From assembly GCF_039654945.1 (NCBI RefSeq), contig NW_027361676.1:32426001-32490000 (forward strand): a stretch of 64,000 bases of DNA, read 5' to 3'. Position numbers and translations under genes: made by a program. Below the pieces are notes generated by a model that was given only the letters and a program-made list of their open reading frames with translations, was not told where the DNA came from and did not search any database. Source of the DNA: Dendrobates tinctorius. Lineage: Eukaryota. Shown here piece after piece: positions 1 through 33,088 of the stretch (position 1 is its first letter; the number at the start of each line of letters is the position of its first letter).

Positions 1-1525
1 CTGATGTGCCCAAACAGTGGAAACCCCCCAATTCTAACTCCATCCCTAACCCCAACACACCCCTAAACCTAATCTCAGCCCTAGCCCTAACCCTTGCCCT
101 AAACCTAACCCTAATGGGAAAATGGAAATAAACACATTTTTTTTATTTTATTATTTTTCCCTAACTAATGGGGTGATAACGGGGGGTTTGATTTACTATT
201 TATGGCGGTTTTTATGTTTGGCAGCTGTCACACGCTAAAAGACGCTTTTTATTGTAAAAATAGTTTTTGCATCACCACATATTGAGAGCTATAATTTTTC
301 CATATTTTGACCCACTGAGTCATGTGAGGTCTTATTTTTTGTGGGACGAGTTGGCGCTTTTACTGGTATCATGTTCGGGCACGTGACATCTTTTGATCGC
401 TTTTTATTCTGATTTTTGGGACGCAGAATGAACAAAAACCAGCATTTCATGAATTTCGTTTGGGGGGTGCGTTTACACCGTTCCGCGTGCAGTAAAATTG
501 ATAAAGCCATTTTATTCTTCGGGTCAGTACGGTTACAGCGATGCCTCACTTATGTCATTTTTTTATGTTTTAGCGCTTTTATGCAATGAAAACTGTTTTA
601 TATAAAAAATAATTATTTTTGCATCGCTTTATTCTGCGAGCCATAACTTTTTTATTTTTTCACTGATGATGCTGTTTGGTGGCTCGTTTTTTGCGGGACA
701 AGATGACGTTTTCAGCGGTACCATGCATATTTATATGCGTCTTTTTGATCGCGCGTTATTGCACTTTGTGTTCGGTGGTATGATAATAAATCATTATTTT
801 TTGCTTTGTTTTTTATTTTTATTTTTTATTTTTTAAGGGGTTCGCTAAAGGGGTTAACTAATGGGACAGTTTTATAGGGCGGGTCGTTACGCACACGGCG
901 ATACCAAATATGTGTACTTTTATCGTTTTTGTATTTTTTATTTCCAAAAAATGAATTTATTAGGGAATATTTTTTTTTTTATTTATTTAGCGATTTTTTT
1001 TAAATTATTTGTACACTTTTTTTTTTTTAACTTTATTACATTGTCCCAGGTGGGACATCACTGTCCTGTGACAGATCGCTGATCTGTCACATCACAGATC
1101 ACTGTGACAGATCAGCGATCTGTCACAGGCACTGCACAAGGCTTCCTCCTTGCCTGTGCTTTGCAGGCACTGAGGAAGTCAGCTCCCTACAGCCACCCGA
1201 AGGTCCCCGTCGCCATCTTGGATCCAGGAACCTGCAGGGAAAGAGCCCCCCGCAGCAGCGCTGCACATTGCGCTGCTGTGGGGGGCTCAGGGAAGCACGG
1301 AGGGAGCCCCCTCCCTGCCAATGCTTCCCTTTAACCCCCGGTACACCGCGATCGTGTTTGATTGCGGTGTCCAAGGGGTTAACATGTCGGGGGCGGTCCG
1401 TGACCACCCCTGACACATTGTGCCGGGTGTTACCGCTGATTGCTGTGACGTACTATCCCATCCCTGGGAATTAAGTCCCAGGGCACATGGACGGGATAGT
1501 ACGTCACATGACAGAAAGGGGTTAA
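1..1525 (-). mobile_element. Terminal part of a non-autonomous piggyBac-type DNA transposon, related to 22912-27986 but in the opposite orientation
   Basis: Ends ...aagggg-TTAA at ~1516-1525 (CCC/GGG terminus plus TTAA site). Bases 1-115 are reverse-complement similar to 23970-24042, including ccctaa repeats. Subterminal hairpins at ~1055-1130, 1331-1382 and 1445-1508. No transposase ORF. Confidence 0.75.
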
Positions 1526-18769: not shown

Positions 18770-21085
18770 CTTTGTTCATTTTAATAAATTTTAGCTTCCC
18801 CAAGTAGGCTAAGGACAGGCAAATGTGCCTGTCTGTGATCACATCATGCTAAACATATGTTCTGATAAAATACTTCCCGCAGGTCAGGCCAGCACATCCA
18901 AAGCATAAGGGGAAAGCCCAGACCATGTGTCCAATGTGAACACTCATAAGTTAAATGGAGCAGACCTTTCAGTTAGTATGTGGAGACATGTGGACAGATA
19001 TTATTCCACCATGTTTTTGTAATGCTACCTACTGCTAATACGGACAGTATCAGATGGTGATGCCGGATGTTTTGGCATGCCAAGTATGTTTTGCCACATT
19101 TCAGCCATGCTAACCCTGCTTTCCAAGATGGTGGCGGTTCCACAGCTTCGATGGCAACTTCCTCCTCCTCTGTCTTGTCCTTCCAGTGAGCCTCTGCTGT
19201 CAGGTGGGAACACCGTCAGTAGTGGCTCTACCAACGTGTGCTTGTATTCACTCTGGTGATTGAAGTAATGACGTTGTCCTTGTAGCAGTGATCCAGCAGG
19301 GTGGCATCCCAATTATCAGTAGTGGTAACAATTTGGCAACTCGTTGGTTGTTGTGCATGAACAGTAGCATGTATTGGCTCATGTGTTTCAGGCTGCCCAA
19401 AGGCAATGACAAGCTGTCCTTGGTGGGAGGCATATGGTGTATGTTCTCTGTATCCTCCCAGCCATGCTCCAGTCATGTCCTTGAGCTTATTTCAGTGCCA
19501 CTCTGTTGGGAACATGTGTCCTCCTCCTCATCATCCTCTAATATTGTCCCCTGCTGGACAGTTGTGTACCTGGCCACTGTTGGTACAGGAACACACCCTC
19601 CAAACCATGTGTGGCAACAGGCTTGATAACGTTGTGAATGCTCCCTTTTCCTCCTGATCCTCTTCCTCTGTTCCAACACCTCATCTATCATCACCTGAAG
19701 CTTTTTTCTAGCAAGCATAGAAGTGGTATAGTAAGGCTCATGATGGCATCATCAGTGCTGGCCATGTTGGTGGTGTATTTGAAGAAGCACAAAATGGCAC
19801 ACATGTCCCCCCATGGAGGCCCAAATGTTGGTGGGGAAGTGGTGTTCCACAGAGCAACTGAGCCGAGTGTGCTGCAGATGAATCTCCTCTATTTCCTGCT
19901 ACTTGCACAGTCTTTCCATCGTGTGCAATGTGGTTTTCATCATTGTGATATGCCACATATCAGTCAGTGAGCAAGAAGGCAGAAGTGACACTGCAGCATA
20001 GACAGGTGAGCAGCAACAAGGTGAAAATGCCGAAAGTGAGCGCACACTGCCTGAACTTTCAGCAGAAGCTCTGACATATGTGGGTTATTTTTATGGAAGC
20101 TTTGCACCACCAAATTCAGCACATGTGCTAGGCAAAGGATGTGCTTCAAACCAGATGGGCCAAGAGCTGCTATGAGATTTGACTCATTATCATGCACCGA
20201 TAGGCCAGGTTTGAGGTTAACCAGGACCAACCTTGCATTTGTCTGTTGTCTGATTACAGTCCACTGCTCCTGGAAGGTGTGAGTTTTTTCCCCAAAACAG
20301 ATAAGTTTCAGAACAGCCTGCTGTCATTTAGGGTCCCGTTACATTTAGCGATGCACCAGCGATCCCGACAACAATACGACCCGGTCAGGATCGTTGGTGC
20401 ATCGCTAAATGGTCGCTAGTGAGCTGCCAAACAGCAGCAGCGGTCGGCGGTCGATACTTACCTCTCAGACTCGGTGATGATGACTTCTTCTGCCCCTGTC
20501 CATGGCTTGCTCATCGGCGCCAGCAGGAAGCCGACGACGAGAAAACGGCCCAGGACATTCTTGCACGATCACCGATAACCAGCGGGGGAGCCGGTCGGAG
20601 GTCAGTGTCACATGTAGCGATATCGCTAGTAATATCACTGCTGCGTCACAAAATCGGTGTCACTTTAGCTGGCTGTGCTGAAGTTGGTAGTGAAGGTCTT
20701 GTGACTGGATGAGGAAGTGGATTTGGAGGAAGAGGCAACTTGGACAGAGGAATGTCCAGCAATACAAGGTAGTGGTGGGACATGAACTAGAATGCCTTTC
20801 GCCTCAGACCCAGCCGCCACTACATTTACCTAGTGGGCAGTTAGGAAGATGTAACTTCTCTTTCCATGCTTTCTGGTCCACGTATTGGTGGTTATGTGGA
20901 CTTTGCCATTGATAGAGCTGTCCAGTGAAAACACGTGATTTAGACAGCAACAAGTGTGCACAGGGTAGGCATGGTTCACCTGGAATAGTAGTGGCTGGCA
21001 ACAACATACTGCAGGACAGACACCGCAATCAGTTTTTTAAAACTGTCCATATCCACCAGCCAGAATGGCAGCATTTCAAAGGCCA
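18770..21085 (-). pseudogene. hAT (Ac-like) transposase remnant
   Basis: DNESN and CLAHVLNLVV (CxxH) motifs in ORF 19964-20230, an RWNST-like segment near 19890, and a C-terminal dimerisation-like segment (VLAxPAGSILSExMFS) at ~18850-18900. Confidence 0.85.
20328..20668. mobile_element. MITE fragment (PIF/Harbinger-like) inside the hAT remnant
   Basis: CpG-rich insertion with internal inverted repeats (agcgat...atcgct) interrupting the transposase. The right terminus is unclear. Confidence 0.5.
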
Positions 21086-23668
21086 ATAAAGATGAGCGAA
21101 CCCATGGATGTTTGGGTTCGGGTCCTGTCAAACATTTTAAAAAAGTTCAGTTTGGGTATCAGAACGGTGTCAGAACCTGAACCTGGAACACATTCAAATG
21201 AATGGGGGGCCCCAACATCATGTGTTTACCATGCTGTCAACTGTTTGATCAGCGGTAAAAAGGTTACCGCTAGTAAGAGTGCTCCTGCTCCCACGCTGTC
21301 ATACAGATGATAGCTTGTAAGCCAGCAGCTCTGACCAGCGTTAAAATGGTTACGGCTGATCACTGGCATTGGATGATGAGTACTACTCATTTATACATCT
21401 GGTCTATCTGATAGCAGCGAGAGCAGGTGTACAGTGATGGAAGTATTCACCAGTGGGCACCTGTACAATAAATAAATATATAAGAGATGTAGGGTCTGTT
21501 CTATTCTTGGTAACCAGCTAAGACAAAACCAACAACTGCAGACTGCAGCCCGAAACAGTCAGTTTTATCATGGCTGTTTATCAATTATAGAGGGGTCCCA
21601 CATTAATTAATAAATAATTCAAAAAACAGCATGGGTTTCCCCCATTTTTGACAACCAGACATCTGGAGGCTGGTATTCTCAGACTGGCAAGGGACCATGG
21701 ATATTGGCCCTCCTCAGTCAAAAAATAGCAGCCTGAAGTTGCCTCAGAAAAGGCAGATCTTTTCGATGTGCCAATTCTGGCTCTTTGCCCAGAACTTCCC
21801 ACTTTCCCTGTTGCTGCCGCAAGTGGGGAAATATTTCTGAGGTTGATGTCAGCTTTATAATATCAGCTGACATTAAGCCCACATGTTATTAATGGAGAGA
21901 CATCTATAAGACACCCCCATTATTAACCCAATAATCATATTGTAAAAAATACACAGCCAGAATAAAGTCCTTTAATTGAAAGAAAGACACATACTCCTTT
22001 ATTTTAAATAAATACTATTTTCCAATTTATTACTGCAAAATAAAAAAATAATAAACCACCATATTCCTCACCTGTCCATCGAGAAGTAAATCCACACCTG
22101 GTTTCTTGAAGAGCTTCAGTTCTGCTACATCTGGGTGGTTTGCTGAGCACTGGCATGATGCAACCGCTCAGCAAGCTAGCCAGAACACACTATGACAGGA
22201 GCATGATTACGCTGCAGTGTGTAGCACTGATGTGAGAAAGGTCACTGGAGTTCAAAGCTGAAGAACCCCAATTACCTCACTAACATCACCGCTATCATTG
22301 TGAGAAAGTTCTCACACAGCGAGCAGTGACATCTGTGAGGTGACCAGAGTTCACCAGCTACTAACTCCGGTGACATTTCTTACATCAGTATTACACACTA
22401 CAGGAGTGTAATCACACTCCTGTCTCAGTGTGTTCAAAATAGAGGAGTCTATATCTTTCTTTCAATTAAAGGACTTTATTCAGCCAGGACATGTCTGTTT
22501 AGCCTATTGCTGGTTATTGAAAACAGGAGGGATCCCATGCCATTTTTAGGAGGTCTCCATTATTAAAATCAGCAAAAGGTAAGCAAACAGCTGTGAGCTT
22601 TTATTAATTCCCTTAAAACCTTTATGGATATTGTCCCATTCCCAGAATATAAACAATAGCCTCCAGACATCGGATTTCCCTCAGCTGGTTATGAAAATTA
22701 CAGGGGACCCCAAGCTGTTTTTTCATTTATTTTTTATTTATTAACAAGTACAGTAAAATACACACCCAAGATAGCATTTGTTACAGCCTTCAGGTGTTCC
22801 AGAAGCTGGAAACTTCAATAGCCTTAAAATGGCCCTCAAAGTGTTCAGTAAGGTTTTCAGGCCTTACAACTGCCACGAGACTCGGTGGCAGTGAACTCTG
22901 GCAACCTTTAACCCCTTCACGACCTTTGACGCCACGTAGGCGTCATGAAAAGTCGTGACAATACGACCCATGACGCCTAGGTGGCGTCATGAATTTATTG
23001 CCCCCCTGCGGGTCGGGTGACCGGGGTCACTGAAAGGTCACCCGACCCGCACACAAAGGACCCTTCAGAGTTAACACCTGGGGGTGTGGCTTAGCCCCCA
23101 CGTGCCTGCAATCGCTCTGATTGGCTGTTAAAAGTGAAACTGCCAATCAGAGCGATTGTAATATTTCACCAATGAAAAGTGGTGAAATATTACAATCCAG
23201 CCATGGCCGATGCTGAAATAGCATCGGACATGGCTGGACACTGAGACCCGACCCCCCCCCACACCGACTGACGGCACCGATCGGCTGCCGCCGCAGTCTG
23301 ACGGCACCGATCGGCAGCCACCGTCATAATCTGCCCCCGCCTTCCCTCCGCCCCCCCAGCCCTCCGATCACCCCCTCAGCCCTCCGATCACCCCCTCTCA
23401 CTCTCCTTTGTGCCTCCGATCTCCCGCTATCCATCCCGGTGTCCTGCCGTCCAGCGTCATGGGCGCCGCCATCTTGGAAGATGGCGGGCGCATGCGCAGT
23501 GCGCCGAATCGAATCTGCAACGCTGCAGATTCATTCATTTATTTTGATCACTATAATAAACTTTCATAGTGATCAAAATTAAAAAAAAGTAAATCACCGC
23601 CCCCTTATCACCCCCATAGGTAGGGACAAATAATAAAAAAAAAAAAAAAAAAAAAATTTATTTTTCCA

Positions 23669-24005
23669 TTAGGGCTAGGGCTAGGGCTAGGGTTAGTGTT
23701 AGGGTTAGGGTTAGGGCTAGGGTTGGAATTAGGGTTAGGGTTAGAAATAGGGTTAGGGTTGGACTAAGGGTTAGGGTTGGACTAAGGGTTAGGGTTGGAC
23801 TAATGGTTAGGGTTGGACTAAGGGTTGGAATTAGGGTTAGGGTTGTAATGGGGATTAGGGTTAGGGTTGGGTTGGGATTACGGTTAGGCTTGTGGTTAGG
23901 GTTAGAGTTGGGATTTCGTTAGGGGTGTGTTGGGATTAGGGTTGAGGTTAGGGTTATGATTAGGGTGGGGATTAGGGTTAAGGGTGTGTTGGGGTTAGGG
24001 TTGGA
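23669..24005 (+). repeat. Degenerate telomere-like (TTAGGG)n array inside the transposon
   Basis: ttaggg units mixed with ctaggg, ttggactaaggg and ttggaa variants over ~340 bp. Confidence 0.9.
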
Positions 24006-24015
24006 GATAGAATTG

Positions 24016-27000
24016 AGGGGTTTCCACTGTTTAGGCACATCACGGGGTTTCAAAAAGCGGCATGGAGCCACCATTTATTCCAGCCAATTTTGCGTTCAAA
24101 AAGTCAAACGGTGCTCCCTCCATTTCGAGCCCTGACATGTGCCCAAACAGTGGTGTGCCCCCACTTATGGGGTATCAGGGTACTCAGGAAAAATTGCACA
24201 ACAACTTTGGGGGTCTAATTTCTCATGTTACCCTTGGGAAAATAAAAACATGGGGGCTAAAATAATTATTTTTGTGGAAAAAAAATGATTTTTTATTTTC
24301 ACGGTTCTGCGTTATAAACTTCTGTGAAGCACTTGGGGGTTCAACGTGCTCACCACACATCTGGATAAGTTCCTTGGGGGGTCTAGTTTCCAAAATGGGC
24401 TCACTTGTGGGGGGTTTCCACTGTTTAGGTACATCAGGGGCTCTGCAAATGTAACATGATGCCCACAGACCATTCCATCAAGTCGGCATTTCAAAACGTC
24501 ACTACTTCCCTTCCGAGCCCCAACGTGTCCATGAACAGTGGCCCCCCCCACATATGGGGTACCAGCGTACTCAGGACAAACTGGACAACAACTTTTGGGG
24601 TCCAATTTATCCTGTTACCTTTGTGAAAATAAAAAATAGTGGACTAAAAATCATTTTTTGAGAGAAAAAAATATTTTTTTATTTTCACGGCTCTGCGTTA
24701 TAAACTTCTGTGAAGCACTTGGGGGTTCAAAGTGCTCACCACACATCTATATTAGTTCCTTGGGTGATCTAGTTTCCAAAATGGGGTCATTTGTGGGGGG
24801 TTTGCACTGTTTAGGTACATCAGGGGCTCTCCAAACGTGACATGACGCCCACAGACCATTCCATCAAGTCGACATTTCAAACGTCACTACTTCCCTTCCG
24901 AGCCCCAACGTGTGCCCAAACATTGGTCCCCCCACATATGGGGTACCAGCGTACTCAGGACAAGCTGGACAACAACTTTTGGGGTCCAATTTATCCTGTT
25001 ACCCTTGTGAAAATAAAAAATAGCAGGCTAAAAATCATTTTTTGAGGGAAAAAAATATTTTTTTATTTTCACAGCTCTGCGTTATAAACTTCTGTGAAGC
25101 ACTTGGGGGTTCAAAGTGCTCACCTCACATCTAGATTAGTTCCTTGTGTGATCTAGTTTCCAAAATGGGGTAATTTGTGGGGGATTTGCACTGTTTAGGT
25201 ACATCAGGGTCTCTGCAAACGTAACATGACGCCCACAGACCATTCCATCAAGTCTTCATTTTAAAGCGTCACTACTTCCCTTCCGAGCCCCGTGTGCCCA
25301 AACAGTGGTCCCCCCCACTTATGGGGTACCAGCGTACTCAGGACACACTGGACAACATCTTTTGGGGTCCAATTTATCCTGTTACTCTTGTGAAAATAAA
25401 AAATAGTGGACTAAAAATCATTTTTTGAGGAAAAAAAATATTTTTTTATTTTCATGGCTCTGCGTTATAAACTTCTGTGAAGCACTTGGGGGTTCAAAGT
25501 GCTCACCACACATCTATATTAGTTCCTTGGGTGATCTAGTTTCCAAAATGGGGTCATTTGTGGGGGGTTTGCACTGTTTAGGTACATCAGGGGCTCTCCA
25601 AACGTGACATGACGCCCACAGACCATTCCATCAAGTCGACATTTCAAACGTCACTACTTCCCTTCCGAGCCCCAACGTGTGCCCAAACATTGGTCCCCCC
25701 ACATATGGGGTACCAGCGTACTCAGGACAAGCTGGACAACAACTTTTGGGGTCCAATTTATCCTGTTACCCTTGTGAAAATAAAAAATAGCAGGCTAAAA
25801 ATTTATTTTTTGAGGAAAAAAATTTTTTATTTTAACGGCTCTGCATTATAAACTTCTGTGTAGCACCTGGGGGTTCAAAGTGCTCACTATGCATCTAGAT
25901 AAGTTCCTTAGGGGTCTAGTTTTCAAAATGGGGTCATTTGTGGGGGAGCTCCAAAGTTTACGCACACAGGGGCTCTGCAAACACGACATGGTGTCCACTA
26001 ACGATTGGAGCTAATTTTCCATTCAAAAAGTCAAATGACGCTCCTTCCCTTCTGAGCCATGCCGTGCGCTCAAACAGTGGTTTCTCCCCACATATGGGGT
26101 ACCAGTGTACTCAGGACAAACTGGACAACAACTTTTGGGGTCCAATTTATCCTGTTACCCTTGGGAAAATAAAAAATAGCGGACTAAAAAATCATTTTTG
26201 AGGAAAAAAAATATTTTTTTATTTTCATGGCTCTGCATTTATAAACTTCTGTGAAGCACTTGGGGATTCAGAGTGCTCACTACACATCTAGATAAGCTCC
26301 TTGGGGGTTCTAGTTTCCAAAATGGGGTCACTTGTGGGGGTTTCTACTGTTTAGGCACACAGGGGTTCTGCAAATGCAGCATGACACCCGCAGAACATTC
26401 CATCAAAGTCTGCATTCCAAAATGGCGCTCCTTCCCTTCTGAGCTCTCCCATGCTCCCAAACAGTGGTTCCCCCCCACATTTGGGGTATCGGTGTACTCA
26501 GGACAAATTGCAAAACAACTTTTGTGGTTCAATTTCTCCTGTTAGCCTTGTGAAAATTAAAAATAGCGGGCTAAAAAATCATTTTTGAGCATAAAAAAAT
26601 GATTTTTTATTTTCACTGCTCTGCGTTATAAACTTCTGTGTAGCACTTGGGGGTTCAAAGTGCTCACCACACATCTAGATAAGTTCCTTCAGGGGTCTAG
26701 TTTCCAAAATGGGGTCACTTGTGGGGGAGCTCCAATGTTTAGGCACACAGGGGCTCTCCAAATGCGACATGGTGTCCGCTAACGATTGGAGCTAATTTTC
26801 CAATCAAAAAGTCACATGGCGCTCCTTCCCTTCCGGGCCCTGCCGTGCGCCCAAACAGTGGTTTATGACCACATATGAGGTATTGATGTACTCAGGAGAA
26901 ATTGCCCAACAAATTTTAGGATCCATTTTATCCTGTTGCCCATGTGAAAATGAAAAAACTGAGGCTAAATAATATTTTTGTGAAAAAAAAGTACTTTTTT

Positions 27001-27400
27001 TTTTACGAATCAATTTGTGAAGCACCTTGGGATTCAAAGTGCTCACTATGCATCTAGATAAGTTCCTTGGAGGGTCTAGTTTCCAAAATGGGGTCACTTG
27101 TGGGGGAGCTCCAATGTTTAGGCACACAGGTGCTCTCCAAACGCGACATGGCAACCGCTAAATATTCAAGCATATTTTCCATTCAAAAAGTAAAATGGCG
27201 CTCCTTGCCTTCTGAGCCCTGCCGTGCGCCCAAACAGTGGTTTATGACCACATATGAGGTATCGGTGTACTCAGGAGAAATTGCCCAACAAATTTTAGGA
27301 TACATTTTATCCTGTTACCCATGTGAAAATGAAAAAACTGATGCTAAAAGAAAATTTTGGTTGGAAAAATTAAAATGTCCATTTTTTCATTCCATGTTGC
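24016..27400 (+). repeat. Tandem satellite, about 9 units of ~380-395 bp
   Basis: Unit marker ggggg..cca.tgtttagg.aca at about 24016, 24411, 24796, 25179, 25563, 25943, 26336, 26723 and 27102. Units 767 bp apart are near-identical. Confidence 0.9.
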
Positions 27401-28580
27401 TTTAGTTCCTGTGAAGCACCTGAAGGGTTAATAATCTTCTTGAATGTAGTTTTGAGTAGCTTGAGGGGTGCAGTTTTTAGAATGGTGTCACTTTTGGGTA
27501 TTTTCTGCCATATAGACTCCTCAAAGTGACTTCAAATGTGAGGTGGTCCCTAAAAATAATGGTTTTGTAAATTTTGCTGTAAAAATGAGAAATTGCTGGT
27601 CAACTTTTAACCCTTATAACTTCCTAACGAAAAAAAATGTTGTTTCCAAAATTGTGCTGATGTAAAGTAGACATGTGGGAAATGTTATTTATTAACTATT
27701 TTGTGTCACAAGGCTCTCTGGTTTAACAGAATAAAAATTCAAATTTTGAAAATTGCAAAATTTTCAAAATTTTCACCAAATTTTCATTTTTTTCACAAAT
27801 AAATGCAAAAATTATCGACCTAAATTTACCACTAACATGAAGCCCAATATGTCACAAAAAAACAATCTCGGAATCGCTAGGATGCATTGAAGCATTCCTG
27901 AGTTATTACCTCATAAAGGGACATTGGTCAGAATTGCAAAAAATGGCCAGGTCGTTAAGGTCAAAATAGGCTGGGTCATGAAGGGGTTAAGGTTCAAACA
28001 AGTAGAATTCCAGCTTCTGGAATTAATTTTAAAAATGTGAAAAACATTTTATTTGGAACATATTTAAAAATCAAAAAAATTCTTGCCGTATTGCAGGGAG
28101 CAGGAAGAAACATGGCTAAGCATTTTGAATGCTAACAGTGTTCTTCCTCATGTCTTTTTATTATTATTGGCAGAACCTGGAATTTTGGTCAGAATGTCAT
28201 TCCGTGCATGCTGGATCACAAAATATAGGATACACTGAGCTGGCTAATTTTCATCTTTTTTTATAACCTTTAAAATTACATGAGTTCAGAGCCCCTGGAT
28301 CCCATGGTAGCTTGAGTGCCGGACTGATAAATGCCGGAATCGCAGTCGTTCATTAGTTTGGCACTGGTACTTGTAAAGCAATTGAAATAGCGACTAATGA
28401 ACTCAGGTGACCTTACTGTACTTGTTAATAAATGCAAAAATCAATGAAAAAACAGTGTGGGGTCCCCTTTACTTTTCAGAGCGACATCTTAATATTCTGG
28501 GAATGGAAATGTCCATAAAGCTTACCATGCTATTAATATCAGCTCACAGCTGTTTACTTAGCCTCTACTTGTGGGGCTTT

Positions 28581-28868
28581 TTGTTCTCTTCCATAAGAAG
28601 CCATAAGATGAGCTCCATTGCAGACAGAGATGATGGGAGTAATTTTGGTGGACTTTTGGAAGAAGATGATAGGGATAAAACAAAACGGTTGTTTCAGAAT
28701 AGGTCGGAGAAGAAGTGCAGAGACCAGTTCAATGTGCTCATTAAGGAGCTTGGGTCTATGCAGCCCGGAAATGCCCCCAAGATGGACAAATCCACAGTGT
28801 TGCAAAAGAGTATTAACTTTCGGAGGAAACACAAAGAAATTAATGCCAGTGAAATCAGACAAGACTGG
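28581..28868 (+). pseudogene. CLOCK: Intronless (mRNA-derived) fragment of the circadian gene CLOCK: N-terminus plus bHLH
   Basis: Translation [89 protein letters not shown] (ATG 28608) aligns to vertebrate CLOCK as recalled ([91 protein letters not shown]). It has a 4-codon deletion and ends before PAS-A. Confidence 0.93.
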
Positions 28869-29900
28869 GTGCTCAGATTCAGAAGATTTATGCCACACTT
28901 CAGGTTCTGATGGCACAGTGTGCAAACCACCCGCATCTTGTCATCAGCACATTGGCTGACAAAAATGTCCTGCCAGAGAGCTACATTGAGCTGGCTTTGT
29001 TATTCTCATTTCTTCAGCGGGGTGGGCAGCGGCATCCGATGTTCTGACTAGAAGCCGCCCTCTTTGCTTTTGCGCCTTGCTCTCTCTTTTGCTATGCTAC
29101 TGGAGTAGCATGACCACCTCATCTTCCTCCAAACTGCACATGTCACTAGGATGGCCTTTGCTTCATGTGGGGTCTAGAACCTCATTATCTCCCACGTCAT
29201 CTTCCAACCAGTCCTCACTCCTGCCCTTCTTGCCGATTTGCATACTGCAGTAAGAAGAAACAGTTGGTACCTGTGTTTCATCACCATCACCTTCCCATTT
29301 ATGCATCCTCCAACTTATCAAATGGTTGAGCATCAGTGAAGTTAATATTGTTTTGTGGAGCAGGGCCAGACGGAACACAGCCAGTGAAGTCATCAAAAAA
29401 CTGACTGCTGCATGACTTTGGATTTAGACTACATGGCTGATTTGCAAGGGGATGGGGTGGAAGTCGGATGACCATGGCCCGCAGGTGCCAAGTCTGCACT
29501 TTCTGCAGTGAACTTAATGGATGATAATGCAAAGGAACTGTAGGCACTCTTAGCCATCCAATCTAACATCAGCTCAACATGTTCTCACCTCACCATTCAT
29601 GTAGCGGTATTCATCTCTATGAACTGACGCAAAATGTCTTGTCGCCTGTGTTCACCAGAGGAATGTGCTGTATTTGGGCACACAGCAGAAACAGAACGAC
29701 CACTTCTTCATCCTGCAGCAGGTTCATCACCACCACTACCAGAAGCAGCTACAACAACACCACCATGGCCATGTCCTCATCCCCTCATTGATGGTCTACT
29801 CATTTTTTTAAGTGGTTTTCAGGTACACCACTCCCACAAACTCACACAGCGGCAGAGTATAATTATTTTTTTAGGCCAGGCCTCAACATGTACAGACACA
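28869..29900 (-). pseudogene. hAT transposase N-terminal and BED zinc-finger remnant
   Basis: Minus-strand [29 protein letters not shown] (BED-like) and acidic EDDVGDNEVLDPT segment. Confidence 0.7.
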
Positions 29901-30273
29901 ATGGTAGAGTATAATTATTTTTTTTTAGACATGGACACAACTTGTTATGCACAGCAGTAGATTTAAATTATTATTTTGGCCTATCCATAACTTGTACAGA
30001 CACAACTGCAGAGTATAATTCTTTTTTAGGCCCACTTCTCGTACTTGGCTGCAGAGTGACTTTTTGACACAGTACTCCGGCAAGCAGGGGTGCAGAGTAC
30101 ACAAAAAGACTTTTTGGCACAATGCTGCCACTGAGACACATGCCGAGTACACACACGAGGCTTTTTTGCAGAGTGCTCACAAACAAAGTCTAATATTGTC
30201 CCTCACTACAGCTGCGTTCTACCCTTACACTAATCAGAGAAAAATGGTGGTGGCACCAATGATCTGGCATTAA

Positions 30274-30632
30274 GGCTATGTGCCCATGTTAGCATTTTTA
30301 AACGCTCAGGAAACTGATCCCCTTCCCAGAAAACGCGTGTTTTATTTCCGCGAGTTTTTTGCACAAAAGACGAGCGTTTTTGACGCATTTTTTCCGCGCG
30401 TTTTGTGGGCACATTGGAAAAGGCTTAAAACACTCAGCAATGCGGAAATTAATGAGCATGCTGGGTTTTTAGCCGCTAAGCGATTCCCGAGCGTTTAAAA
30501 ACGCATGCATTGGCACAAAAAGCCAAAAATGCATGCAATTTAATGTGAAGCTTCTTTTAAGCGTTTCTGCAGTGTCTGAGCCGGCACAAACTCTGCGGAA
30601 ACGCTTAAAAAATGCAACGTGGGCACACAGCC
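30274..30632. mobile_element. PIF/Harbinger-type MITE
   Basis: TIRs ggctatgtgccca / tgggcacacagcc. 3-bp TAA TSD at 30271-30273 and 30633-30635. Confidence 0.85.
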
Positions 30633-33088
30633 TAATACAAGCTGGGTCATGTAGCGCACCATCCAGTCACAGCCATGCCAATACTTGTCATGGCAGTGAT
30701 GGCTCCGTAAGTGTCCACAACCTAAAAGCTTGTAGATTGGCCATACTGCAGCCTTTCATCAAACTTTATTAGGCATCTAAACTTGAACAGTAAACCGGAC
30801 TTCTGGGAAGAAGTCCATGTTCAGGGTTTGATATGGTTTGAACCCCGAACTTTACAGTTCGGATTCGCTCATGGCTATTCATATCCAGTAAACGTATTCA
30901 CATTTTTTACATTATACACACAAACTTAAATTTTATGTGATATACCAGCACAAAGTAGCAAGTATTTATGAAGTGCAAAGAAATTATACATGTTTTTCTT
31001 AACAACTTAAAAATAGAAATCTGAAAATTGTGACATGCATTTGTATTCAGCCCCCTTGAGTCCGGTACGCCTGAATAAATATTATATATATTATTTATTA
31101 TGCCCCCAGTCATTAAAAACCCGCTATGACAAAATGCTAATGATGGGGCAGGCCTGCACCTCCAAGGCATTGAGGGACAGTTCATGCCATATGTCCAGTT
31201 TGGATACCAAATAGCTGTACGGCACAGAGAAATCATAGAGAACACTAGTATGGTTGGCTAGGTACTCCTTCACCATCTTCCAAAACTTTTCCCTTTTTGT
31301 CAGACTACGCCACACATCAGGGCCTGGGCACTGGGAGGGTCTAATGAAACTGTCCCAGAACTTTGATAGTGTTCCCCTGCCTTTGTTATATCTGGTGTGA
31401 GTCTCTCCACCTTGGTTTCCCAAAGAACTATCACCTCTACCACCAGCGTTGTCAAATGGGAATTTTTGTACTAATTGCTCTACCAGTGCCTCTTGATATT
31501 GCACCATTTAACTAGCTCTCTCTGCCACAGGAATGAGAGACGGAAAGTCCTCCTTGTTGTAGCATGAGTCGAGAAGGGTGAACAACCAATAATCACTGTT
31601 GTTCAAAATACGAGTAACATGAGGGTCACAGGAAAGTCAGCGGGGCATAAAATCAGCCATTTGTGCCAGACTCCCAACAGACAAGACTTCCCTGTCCCTA
31701 CCACGAGGATTTCTCTCCATCTCCTCCTCTTCTCTCTGCTCATCCTCCTCAGCCTATCTATGCTGAACAGACTTATGAAGCTGGTGTTGCTAATGCACTC
31801 TGTAGCACAGGCAACCATTTCCTGCTCCCTCTCCTCCTCAGCCTCCTCCTACTCATTATCACCCAATCTGCAAGGAGATGAGATGAGGCTGGACTGGGTA
31901 GTATCACCCTGTGTACTTTCTTCCTCCATCTCCATCTGGTTCACATGCAAATCTTCCTCTTTAATTGTGAGCAGCGAGCATTTAAGTAGACACAGAAGCA
32001 GGATTGTTACACCACTGACCATCTTAGTTAATTCCTCAAAGTTTTGTCCAAGCCTACGCATCGATTATCTACAAAATACCGATCTATAAGAAATACTGGA
32101 TACTGGAGTTTGTATTACATCATAATTTTTTCGTCTTCAAGGATCGTTTTTTCTTACAAAAACGCGGCACTGCCATGGGTGCGGCGTGCGCCCCGTAATA
32201 TGCAAACCTGTTTCTTGGTTATTGGGAGAGGCAGGTTTTCCTTGGTGGCGGGGCCCACGCCGCAGACCATGTGCAGTGCTGGCACCGTTATATAGATGAC
32301 GTACTAGTCATCTGGCAGGGTTCTATATCTGAACTCAGGGAATTTATGCAACATCTCAATTTGAATTACTGTATGTGAACCTTCGATTCACTTATAAATG
32401 GCACAAATCAAGCCTTGAGTTCTTGGATGTCCTACTGTGTGTGGATGCAGATGGAGTAATCCAAACTGATCTGTTCCGCAAGGAGACAGCAGTAAATTCC
32501 CTCTTACATGCATCTTCTGCGCATGTCCCACCTGTTATTCGTGCTATTCCCACTGGACAGTACTTACGGACTCGGCGCATTTGTTCTACGGAGGAAAAAT
32601 TTGAGCAGCAGGCCAAAGATCTAGGAGAACGATTTAGATCTAGAGGGTATAGTAATCGCTGCATTAGACAGGGATATAGGAGAGACAAACGGACCCCATG
32701 TAATGAATTATTAACCAATTCCTTTAATCCACGGCAACAAGGGAATGAGAATACCATTTGTTTTGTATCTACTTCTAATTGCCTTTGGGATCGGATGAGA
32801 GATATTGTGGAAAAATGCTGGCCGGTCTTACAGACCGATGCAACTCTAATGGCTTGTTTGCCATCAAAACCAAGAATAATTCCTAGACGAAGTATGAATC
32901 TAAAGGATTATCTAGTTAAAAGCCATTATGTACAGAAAACTACAACACCCTTTACCAATTCAAGACGAACATAAGGATGCTTCCCATGTGGCAGATGTGT
33001 CGCATGCCCAAATGTCTGTAGAACTTCGACATTCACATCATCTGATGGGAAGAAAACCTTTCATATAAGGGACTTTATCACATGCAAT

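What the first reader, a model, noticed from the sequence alone, without database searches (positions are those of the whole stretch)
28581..28868. Spliced CLOCK bHLH fragment captured inside hAT transposon sequence
Seen: ~290 bp encoding the CLOCK N-terminus and bHLH with no introns, no poly(A) and no visible TSD. It abuts hAT-type subterminal repeat on the left and the hAT BED-finger coding sequence (opposite strand) on the right, between TIR-like ends at 21087 and 30877. Established: this part of vertebrate CLOCK spans several exons, and LINE-made retrocopies are normally 3'-anchored. Inference: an RNA/cDNA-templated patch at a break in the transposon (Pack-TIR-like capture) that could have been amplified by transposition.
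Basis: partly seen in the sequence, partly recalled or inferred. Interest (0 to 1): 0.8.

Follow-up and report, generated by a model that had tools for sequence, protein, structure and literature searches.

The report
Spliced Clock mRNA patch, single dead copy
A 299-base piece of the frog's own spliced Clock messenger RNA was copied back into DNA and sealed into a chromosome break between two truncated repeats; it is a single decaying copy that never spread, so it is a tidy natural case of a known repair accident and not a gene-carrying transposon.

Summary
Window 28570-28868 (+) is an intronless copy of the Clock N-terminus and bHLH. It matches positions 318-628 of a 5.5-kb Clock transcript contig of the same species at 94% identity, with a 12-base deletion. 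It crosses three exon junctions (28627|28628, 28687|28688, 28836|28837) and begins and ends inside exons. It has no poly(A) tail and no target-site duplication.

- RNA/cDNA origin without LINE hallmarks is supported.
- Amplification by transposition is refuted. One contig at unique depth spans both junctions in the source animal. The flanking repeat family does not carry the piece.
- "Inside a hAT" is not established. The BED-like motif failed every statistical search, no transposase domain lies between the proposed ends, and there is no 8-bp duplication. The left neighbour is a truncated, very high-copy MITE-like repeat, not a hAT subterminal repeat.

A second taxon holds the same right junction, so the event is old. 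The copy decays neutrally (12 replacement to 4 silent changes). No transcript carrying its letters was seen in the one run taken to be RNA.

The best reading is a reverse-transcript patch at a double-strand break (class 2 templated insertion, RMDR or ENi-like). The scan had noted hAT-type capture of host gene pieces elsewhere in this genome, but not this fragment.

The parts
28570..28868 (+). Intronless fragment of Clock mRNA: 38 nt before the conserved Met codon at 28608 (5' leader or, as in mammals, upstream coding sequence), the N-terminus, the whole bHLH, and the start of the next exon. It is 94% identical to the same species' transcript and carries a 12-nt in-frame deletion behind 28844.
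   Evidence: (X6 record 31).
28570..28627 (+). 3' part of the exon holding the start codon. The fragment begins inside this exon, about 34 nt after its acceptor site as placed in the bird gene.
28628..28687 (+). Complete second coding exon (60 nt), joined without an intron on both sides.
28688..28836 (+). Complete bHLH exon (149 nt). It has 8 amino-acid replacements against its own parent, in a stretch that is nearly invariant among the vertebrate sequences aligned.
28837..28868 (+). 5' part of the fourth coding exon. It ends in mid-exon after the codons for QDW.
28413..28569 (+). Very high-copy MITE-like repeat cut at an internal position. Other copies continue after 28569 with GGTTATTAAAAAGGGGGACCCC. 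An inverted copy (71% identical) lies at 22580-22756.
   Evidence: loose ends at 28569; depth about 44,000.
28869..30273 (-). Middle-repetitive sequence, summed depth about 40-840. Its minus strand reads a BED-like motif at 28999-28869 that stops before the histidine pair. It is putatively the 5' arm of a DNA transposon, but no search supports that class.
30274..30632 (.). Nested 359-bp MITE with 16-nt terminal inverted repeats and a TAA duplication (30271-30273 and 30633-30635), Harbinger/PIF-like. It is not part of the capture event.
   Evidence: depth 20,000-65,000.
30861..30872 (-). TIR-like 12-mer ATGAGCGAATCC. Its partner ATGAGCGAACCC lies at 21092-21103 (+). No 8-bp duplication flanks the pair.

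Best explanation
In a germline ancestor of two related frog taxa, a chromosomal double-strand break lay between a MITE-like repeat and a middle-repetitive element that may be a DNA-transposon remnant. The break was sealed with a 311-nt piece of reverse-transcribed, fully spliced Clock mRNA. Either a broken DNA end primed reverse transcription on the mRNA, or a free cDNA fragment was ligated in by end joining. Both ends of the patch therefore fall inside exons, and it has no poly(A) tail, no target-site duplication and truncated neighbours.

Shown here: RNA origin, exact borders, single-copy state, neutral decay, and presence of the right junction in a second taxon. Inferred: the break itself, the source of the reverse transcriptase, and that a single event made both junctions. 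The patch has no function. It has since lost 12 nt and taken 18 substitutions that wreck the DNA-binding basic region. It was never copied again.
For: RNA origin:
- The piece is colinear with a 5.5-kb transcript contig of the same species, positions 318-628.
- It crosses three intron positions mapped in a bird CLOCK gene. These are seen as ORF breaks in many vertebrate genomic contigs.

Not a LINE-type insertion:
- It ends 5' and 3' inside exons and lacks the 3' UTR, a poly(A) tail and a duplication.

Break and patch:
- The left repeat is truncated exactly at 28569. 202 (X1) and 184 (X5) contigs of that family run on differently.
- No further CLOCK sequence exists in the 64-kb window.
- No second Clock-derived contig is laid at 85% likeness or more in the source animal, so no DNA donor retrocopy is seen.

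Single copy:
- X1 record 3 and X2 record 10 span the junctions at unique depth.

Age:
- X5 (organism B) record 19, at unique depth and about 96.5% identical, runs from 28845 across 28868 to 29501.

Neutral decay:
- 12 replacement and 4 silent differences. At every replacement site the parental letter gives the residue that the other vertebrate CLOCKs aligned carry.

The mechanism is documented experimentally and in natural human and mouse alleles (PMC4516963, PMC5110952).
Against: The pre-integration sequence is unknown, so microhomology and microdeletion at the junctions could not be examined. Whether other copies of the right-hand repeat continue past 28869 is not shown, because no loose-end row for that place was listed. 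X6 is not labelled as RNA; that is inferred from a 5.5-kb intronless contig at depth 39.7 in a 755-Mb run. Intron positions were mapped in a bird and other vertebrates, not in this frog's own gene. The organism B contig has only 24 nt on the CLOCK side of the junction, below the tool's 31-nt rule for bridging.
Confidence: 0.6

Rival explanations
1. This is an ordinary LINE-made processed Clock pseudogene. Two later, independent deletions or rearrangements trimmed it on both sides, leaving 299 nt next to unrelated truncated repeats.
For: Intron loss alone fits. The region is a dense mosaic of nested repeats, a satellite and telomere-like repeats, so rearrangements are plausible. The copy is old, at 6% divergence.
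Against: It needs two separate deletions, each removing part of the retrocopy and part of a neighbouring repeat. No other CLOCK remnant, poly(A) tail or duplication exists in 64 kb. The retained part is the 5' end, whereas LINE copies are 3'-anchored and usually 5'-truncated.
Confidence: 0.2
2. The break was made by excision or abortive gap repair of a hAT-type element. The cDNA patch became part of a non-autonomous Pack-TIR-like element bounded by the ends at 21092 and 30872.
For: The minus strand right of the patch reads a BED-like W..F / C-x2-C motif cut before its histidines. The Atlas feature search puts a zf-BED cluster set among its neighbours (16 of 40 hits, best score 0.92). The two proposed ends share a 12-mer and a 39-nt block scoring above all 500 shuffles. 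Earlier scan notes, not checked here, report hAT-type gene capture elsewhere in this genome.
Against: Pfam, PDB, the word search and the exhaustive HMMER search give no BED or hAT match. No transposase domain lies between the ends. There is no 8-bp duplication and no YARNG terminus. The left neighbour belongs to a different, roughly 100-fold more abundant repeat. The patch is single-copy, so nothing was mobilised.
Confidence: 0.13
3. This is a chimeric retrocopy. A LINE reverse transcriptase switched template from another RNA onto Clock mRNA during a single target-primed insertion.
For: Template-switch chimeras of cellular RNAs are known from mammals (my own knowledge). The Clock part lies at what would be the 5' end on the plus strand.
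Against: No poly(A) tract lies on the plus strand anywhere between 28869 and 31400. There is no duplication. The right-hand sequence would have to be an antisense transcript of a repeat.
Confidence: 0.05
4. This is an assembly or contamination artefact, with cDNA reads joined into the genome assembly.
For: None beyond the oddity of an intronless fragment.
Against: DNA-run contigs X1 and X2 span both junctions without differences. A second taxon holds the right junction. The copy differs from the mRNA by 6% and a deletion.
Confidence: 0.01

Closest known systems
[quoted passage not shown] 2015; PMC4516963)
   Same: A short patch copied from a distant transcribed gene, with introns skipped. It is truncated at both ends, has no duplication and no poly(A) tail, lies at a site with loss of flanking sequence, and the donor gene stays intact.
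   Different: Those cases are induced breaks or young human and mouse polymorphisms with known empty sites and documented microhomologies. This one is an old event in a frog shared by two taxa. It lies between two repeats, and its empty site and microhomologies could not be examined.
Endonuclease-independent (ENi) LINE-1 retrotransposition at broken DNA ends (Morrish et al. 2002, as cited in PMC5110952 and PMC4516963)
   Same: Reverse transcription primed at a DNA lesion. The products lack duplications, are often 3'-truncated without poly(A), and are associated with target deletions.
   Different: ENi was defined with L1 reporters in repair-deficient cells. Here the template is a cellular mRNA, and the reverse transcriptase is unknown. 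This window carries LTR-retroelement pol genes according to other scan notes, which I did not check.
Processed pseudogenes (LINE target-primed retrocopies)
   Same: The source is a spliced host mRNA, and the copy is dead and decays neutrally.
   Different: It lacks the 3' end of the mRNA, a poly(A) tail and a target-site duplication. It keeps the 5' part instead of the 3' part.
Pack-MULE / Pack-TYPE (Pack-TIR) transduplication and filler DNA in Ac/Ds or P-element deletion derivatives
   Same: A host gene fragment lies next to DNA-transposon-like sequence at what looks like an internal deletion breakpoint.
   Different: To my knowledge, Pack elements usually carry genomic fragments with introns, sit between clear TIRs with duplications, and occur in several copies. 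Here the fragment is spliced, the TIRs and duplication are not demonstrable, the superfamily is unproven, and the copy number is one.

Membership tests
Class 2 templated sequence insertion / RMDR patch | Insert templated by RNA of a distant gene (introns absent) | tested here: met
   Colinear with a same-species transcript contig. Three intron positions are crossed.
Class 2 templated sequence insertion / RMDR patch | No target-site duplication, no poly(A) tract, truncated at both 5' and 3' ends | tested here: met
   The borders fall inside exons.
Class 2 templated sequence insertion / RMDR patch | End-joining marks at the junctions (microhomology, microdeletion, untemplated bases) relative to the empty site | tested here: inconclusive
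   The left repeat is truncated against its family (loose ends at 28569). The empty site and the mRNA letters beyond the borders were not available.
Class 2 templated sequence insertion / RMDR patch | Donor locus remains intact | tested here: met
   The parental transcript encodes the canonical bHLH.
LINE-made processed pseudogene | 3'-anchored copy with poly(A) tail | tested here: not met
   It ends in the fourth coding exon and has no A-rich tract.
LINE-made processed pseudogene | Target-site duplication flanking the insert | tested here: not met
   The longest shared flank word is 5 nt and is out of register.
hAT superfamily element | Transposase with BED finger, RNase H-like core and hAT C-terminal dimerisation domain | tested here: not met
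   No Pfam hit in any ORF piece scanned across 21000-23600 and 27950-30800; the satellite and telomere-like stretch between them was not scanned. The BED-like 46 aa gave nothing in PDB, the word search or exhaustive HMMER. The only lead is a weak one from the Atlas.
hAT superfamily element | 8-bp target-site duplication and short TIRs | tested here: not met
   A 12-nt inverted match exists (11 of 100 shuffles give two or more matches), plus a 39-nt similar block. No 8-bp duplication appears in any register.
Pack-TYPE (Pack-TIR) transduplicating element | Captured host fragment carried between TIRs and found in more than one copy, or otherwise shown to have moved | tested here: not met
   Single-contig depth of 5.9 and 8.8 over the fragment, against 40-840 for the adjoining repeat.

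The most novel reading that the evidence does not exclude
The break that took up the Clock cDNA was made by excision or interrupted gap repair of a hAT-like transposon. That would make this a natural vertebrate case of a spliced host mRNA used as filler in a DNA-transposon deletion derivative. The six clustered substitutions at 28671-28696, around an exon junction, would then be a scar of error-prone synthesis during the event.
Probability: 0.15. Interest if true: 0.55.

Novelty: new member of a known kind. Interest (0 to 1): 0.3.

Why it matters
Repair of chromosome breaks with reverse-transcribed cellular RNA is well documented at induced breaks and as young human and mouse polymorphisms. 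Old germline examples seen in more than one taxon are seldom described outside mammals. This locus is such an example in a repeat-rich frog genome, and its borders are defined to the base by the species' own transcript. It also serves as a caution: a gene fragment lying next to transposon-like sequence is not evidence of transposon-mediated capture or spread. The fragment has no consequence for circadian biology, because it is mutated in the DNA-binding basic region and no transcript of it was seen.

Tried and rejected
BED/hAT reading of 28869-28999 (-):
- Pfam, PDB sequences and the word-index protein search on residues 1-46 gave nothing.
- The exhaustive HMMER search gave five hits. All are beta-helix, LRR or low-complexity proteins, so they are spurious.
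- The Atlas feature search gave only a weak zf-BED lead.

Other searches:
- Pfam scans of 27 ORF pieces on both strands across 21000-30800 found no transposase or other domain.
- One Pfam call failed on frame and was corrected.
- Scan-note look-ups by sequence for the right arm and the terminus were blank, which means nothing.
- A search for further CLOCK remnants, a duplication and an A-tail in the window was negative.

Corrected error:
- My first classification of the substitutions used the wrong frame and was redone.

Steps not taken:
- I could not obtain the frog's own Clock gene or the full transcript contig.
- I used only the named bird record.

Full report
**What is there.**
Window 28581-28868 (+) reads without a stop as the CLOCK N-terminus and basic helix-loop-helix. 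It scores above Pfam's HLH threshold (E 1.2e-5). It matches mouse CLOCK in the CLOCK:BMAL1 structure at E 9.7e-29.

Public runs were laid on 27400-31400. A 5503-nt contig of run X6 has the same species label as the source but comes from another sample and study. It aligns to exactly 28570-28868 at its own positions 318-628, with 18 mismatches and one 12-nt gap. The extra letters GCACAGTCTGAC encode AQSD, which other vertebrate CLOCKs have at that place.

Applying the 16 listed differences to the window restores the canonical vertebrate bHLH. That contig is therefore the parental Clock message. I infer that X6 is RNA, because a 755-Mb run gives a 5.5-kb intronless contig at depth 39.7.

**It is spliced.**
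In the CLOCK gene of the bird Semnornis frantzii (locus L001), the fragment's residues lie on four exons separated by about 1.6, 1.0 and 5.4 kb. The splice signals are readable. In window coordinates the junctions are 28627|28628, 28687|28688 and 28836|28837.

Independent support comes from the word search. More than ten 67-98-residue ORFs from unrelated vertebrate genomic contigs share the bHLH exon exactly. They diverge immediately before RVSRNK and after RKHK.

The fragment starts inside the exon that holds the start codon, 38 nt before the Met codon at 28608. That is about 34 nt after the exon's acceptor site as placed in the bird. It ends inside the fourth coding exon. I did not have the frog's own gene, so the intron positions are inferred for this species from their conservation in birds, mammals and other vertebrates.

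**What it lacks.**
- There is no A-rich tract after 28868 and no T-rich tract before 28570.
- There is no flanking direct repeat longer than 5 nt.
- There is no further CLOCK coding sequence anywhere in the 64-kb window.

It is therefore not a standard 3'-anchored LINE retrocopy.

**Copy number and age.**
In the two runs of the probable source animal, single contigs at unique depth span the piece and its junctions. These are X1 record 3 (28535-28925, depth 5.88, no differences) and X2 record 10 (28598-28925, depth 8.83). At nearly every listed position the total depth equals that one contig.

By contrast, the sequence to the right sums to about 40-840 and the 100 nt to the left to about 44,000. 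The neighbouring repeat families therefore do not carry the Clock piece, and it was never amplified.

Run X5 carries another organism label. Its contigs are 94-98% identical along the flanks, whereas paralogous family copies in the source animal are about 83% identical. X5 record 19 (702 nt, depth 7.6) runs from 28845 across the junction at 28868 to 29501. This gives only 24 nt on the Clock side, below the tool's 31-nt rule. Even so, a real Clock gene would continue differently after GACTGG. The event most likely predates the split of the two taxa.

**Decay.**
Of the 16 listed differences from the parent, 12 change the amino acid and 4 do not. At every replacement site the parental letter gives the residue that the other vertebrate CLOCKs aligned carry, so those changes lie on the copy. 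They include RVSRNR to RLFQNR and KKRR to KKCR in the DNA-contacting basic region. Several are CpG transitions.

In X6 the only cover over the piece is the parental contig. The flanks at 28070-28337 and 28874-29007 have depth 0. No transcript with the copy's own letters was seen in that sample.

**The surroundings.**
*Left.* 28413-28569 belongs to a very abundant repeat, and an inverted copy lies at 22580-22756. About 200 contigs per run continue after 28569 with GGTTATTAAAAAGGGGGACCCC. The repeat is therefore cut at an internal position exactly where the cDNA starts.

*Right.* On the minus strand, 28999-28869 reads ALWQDIF...[13 protein letters not shown]...NLST. By eye this resembles the first two thirds of a BED finger cut before its histidines. 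Every test failed:
- Pfam found nothing.
- PDB sequences found nothing.
- The word search found nothing.
- The exhaustive HMMER search returned only beta-helix, LRR and low-complexity proteins.
- Only the language-model look-alike search placed a set of zf-BED clusters among its neighbours, at weak recognition.

None of the 27 ORF pieces scanned across 21000-30800 has a Pfam domain.

*The proposed ends.* They share the 12-mer ATGAGCGAAyCC in inverted orientation. Eleven of 100 shuffles give at least two matches, and the pattern was read off the data. A second 39-nt block scores above all 500 shuffles. They are probably ends of one family. No 8-bp duplication flanks them in any register, and the terminus does not fit the usual hAT start.

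*Between the ends.* The 9.8 kb is a mosaic:
- a nested 0.5-kb element with 49-nt TIRs;
- a poly(A)-ended insert;
- telomere-like repeats;
- a 384-bp satellite;
- a Harbinger-like MITE at 30274-30632 with a TAA duplication.

**Mechanism.**
The simplest account is one break-repair event. A double-strand break with loss of sequence on both sides was sealed with a fragment of reverse-transcribed Clock mRNA. Either a broken end primed on the RNA, or a free cDNA piece was captured by end joining. This matches three described mechanisms:
- class 2 templated sequence insertions (PMC5110952), which have no duplication and no poly(A), show end-joining features and are RNA-derived;
- RT-product-mediated repair in mouse zygotes (PMC4516963), where inserts skip introns and are truncated at both ends;
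- endonuclease-independent LINE insertion, as cited in both papers.

Shown here are RNA origin, borders, truncation of the left repeat, single copy, age and decay. Inferred are the break, the enzyme, and that both junctions arose together.

The main rival is an ordinary retrocopy trimmed by two later deletions. I rate it at 0.2, because it needs two events and leaves the 5' rather than the 3' part. A template-switch chimera (0.05) lacks the required poly(A) tail. An artefact is excluded by independent contigs and by the 6% divergence.

**Earlier scan notes.**
These are unchecked AI notes and I used them only as leads.
- One names this genome as the dyeing poison frog (s1-376861).
- Two others report hAT-type capture of host gene pieces elsewhere in it (s1-366784, s1-389117; same calls).
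- None concerns this fragment.

I did not fetch contigs for the unnamed exon-sized ORFs P0004-P0021, because some might be human. I used only the named bird record. No N stretches were involved.

**Verdict.**
This is a real, cleanly delimited, old, single-copy patch of spliced Clock mRNA at a rearrangement junction. It is a new member of a known kind of event, not a gene-carrying transposon. Interest is 0.3.

Noticed in passing
window 28671-28696: Six of the 16 listed differences between the copy and its parental mRNA fall within 26 nt around the exon junction 28687|28688. At these six places the second taxon's contig does not show the parental letter, while it does at most other places. This could be a mutation cluster made at the time of capture, or an artefact of how contigs break where the copy and the real gene share words.
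   Followed up: partly
window 28762: Runs X1 and X2 come from one sample but give different letters here. X1 has A as in the window, and X2 has T as in the parent. The copy seems heterozygous in the source animal.
   Followed up: no
window 30271-30635: A 359-bp MITE has terminal inverted repeats GGCTATGTGCCCATGT / ACGTGGGCACACAGCC and a TAA duplication, which is Harbinger/PIF-like. Its interior is full of AAACGC/GCGTTT motifs. Summed contig depth is 20,000-65,000, and it is also abundant in the presumed RNA run.
   Followed up: partly
window 23630-27337: A poly(A) tract (23630-23655) is followed directly by about 330 nt of degenerate TTAGGG-like repeats (23670-24002). Then comes a 384-bp satellite of 8.3 units (24119-27337). 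Inverted copies of the telomere-like part lie at window 2-201. Interstitial telomere-like repeats are themselves known break-repair fillers.
   Followed up: no
window 21960-22481: A 522-bp element with 49-nt terminal inverted repeats (90% match) is flanked by AGCCA on both sides. It appears nested in a second, inverted copy of the repeat that adjoins the Clock patch.
   Followed up: no
window 27400-28069: This stretch right of the satellite has the highest summed contig depth in the laid region, up to about 2 million in the DNA runs. It marks one of the most abundant repeats of this genome.
   Followed up: no
L001 12790-12795 (bird CLOCK): The donor site after the bHLH exon in the bird record reads GC rather than GT (AAAG|GCAAGT). 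The deposited partial protein reads through it into the intron (KGKCWNQGS), which looks like an annotation slip in that record.
   Followed up: no
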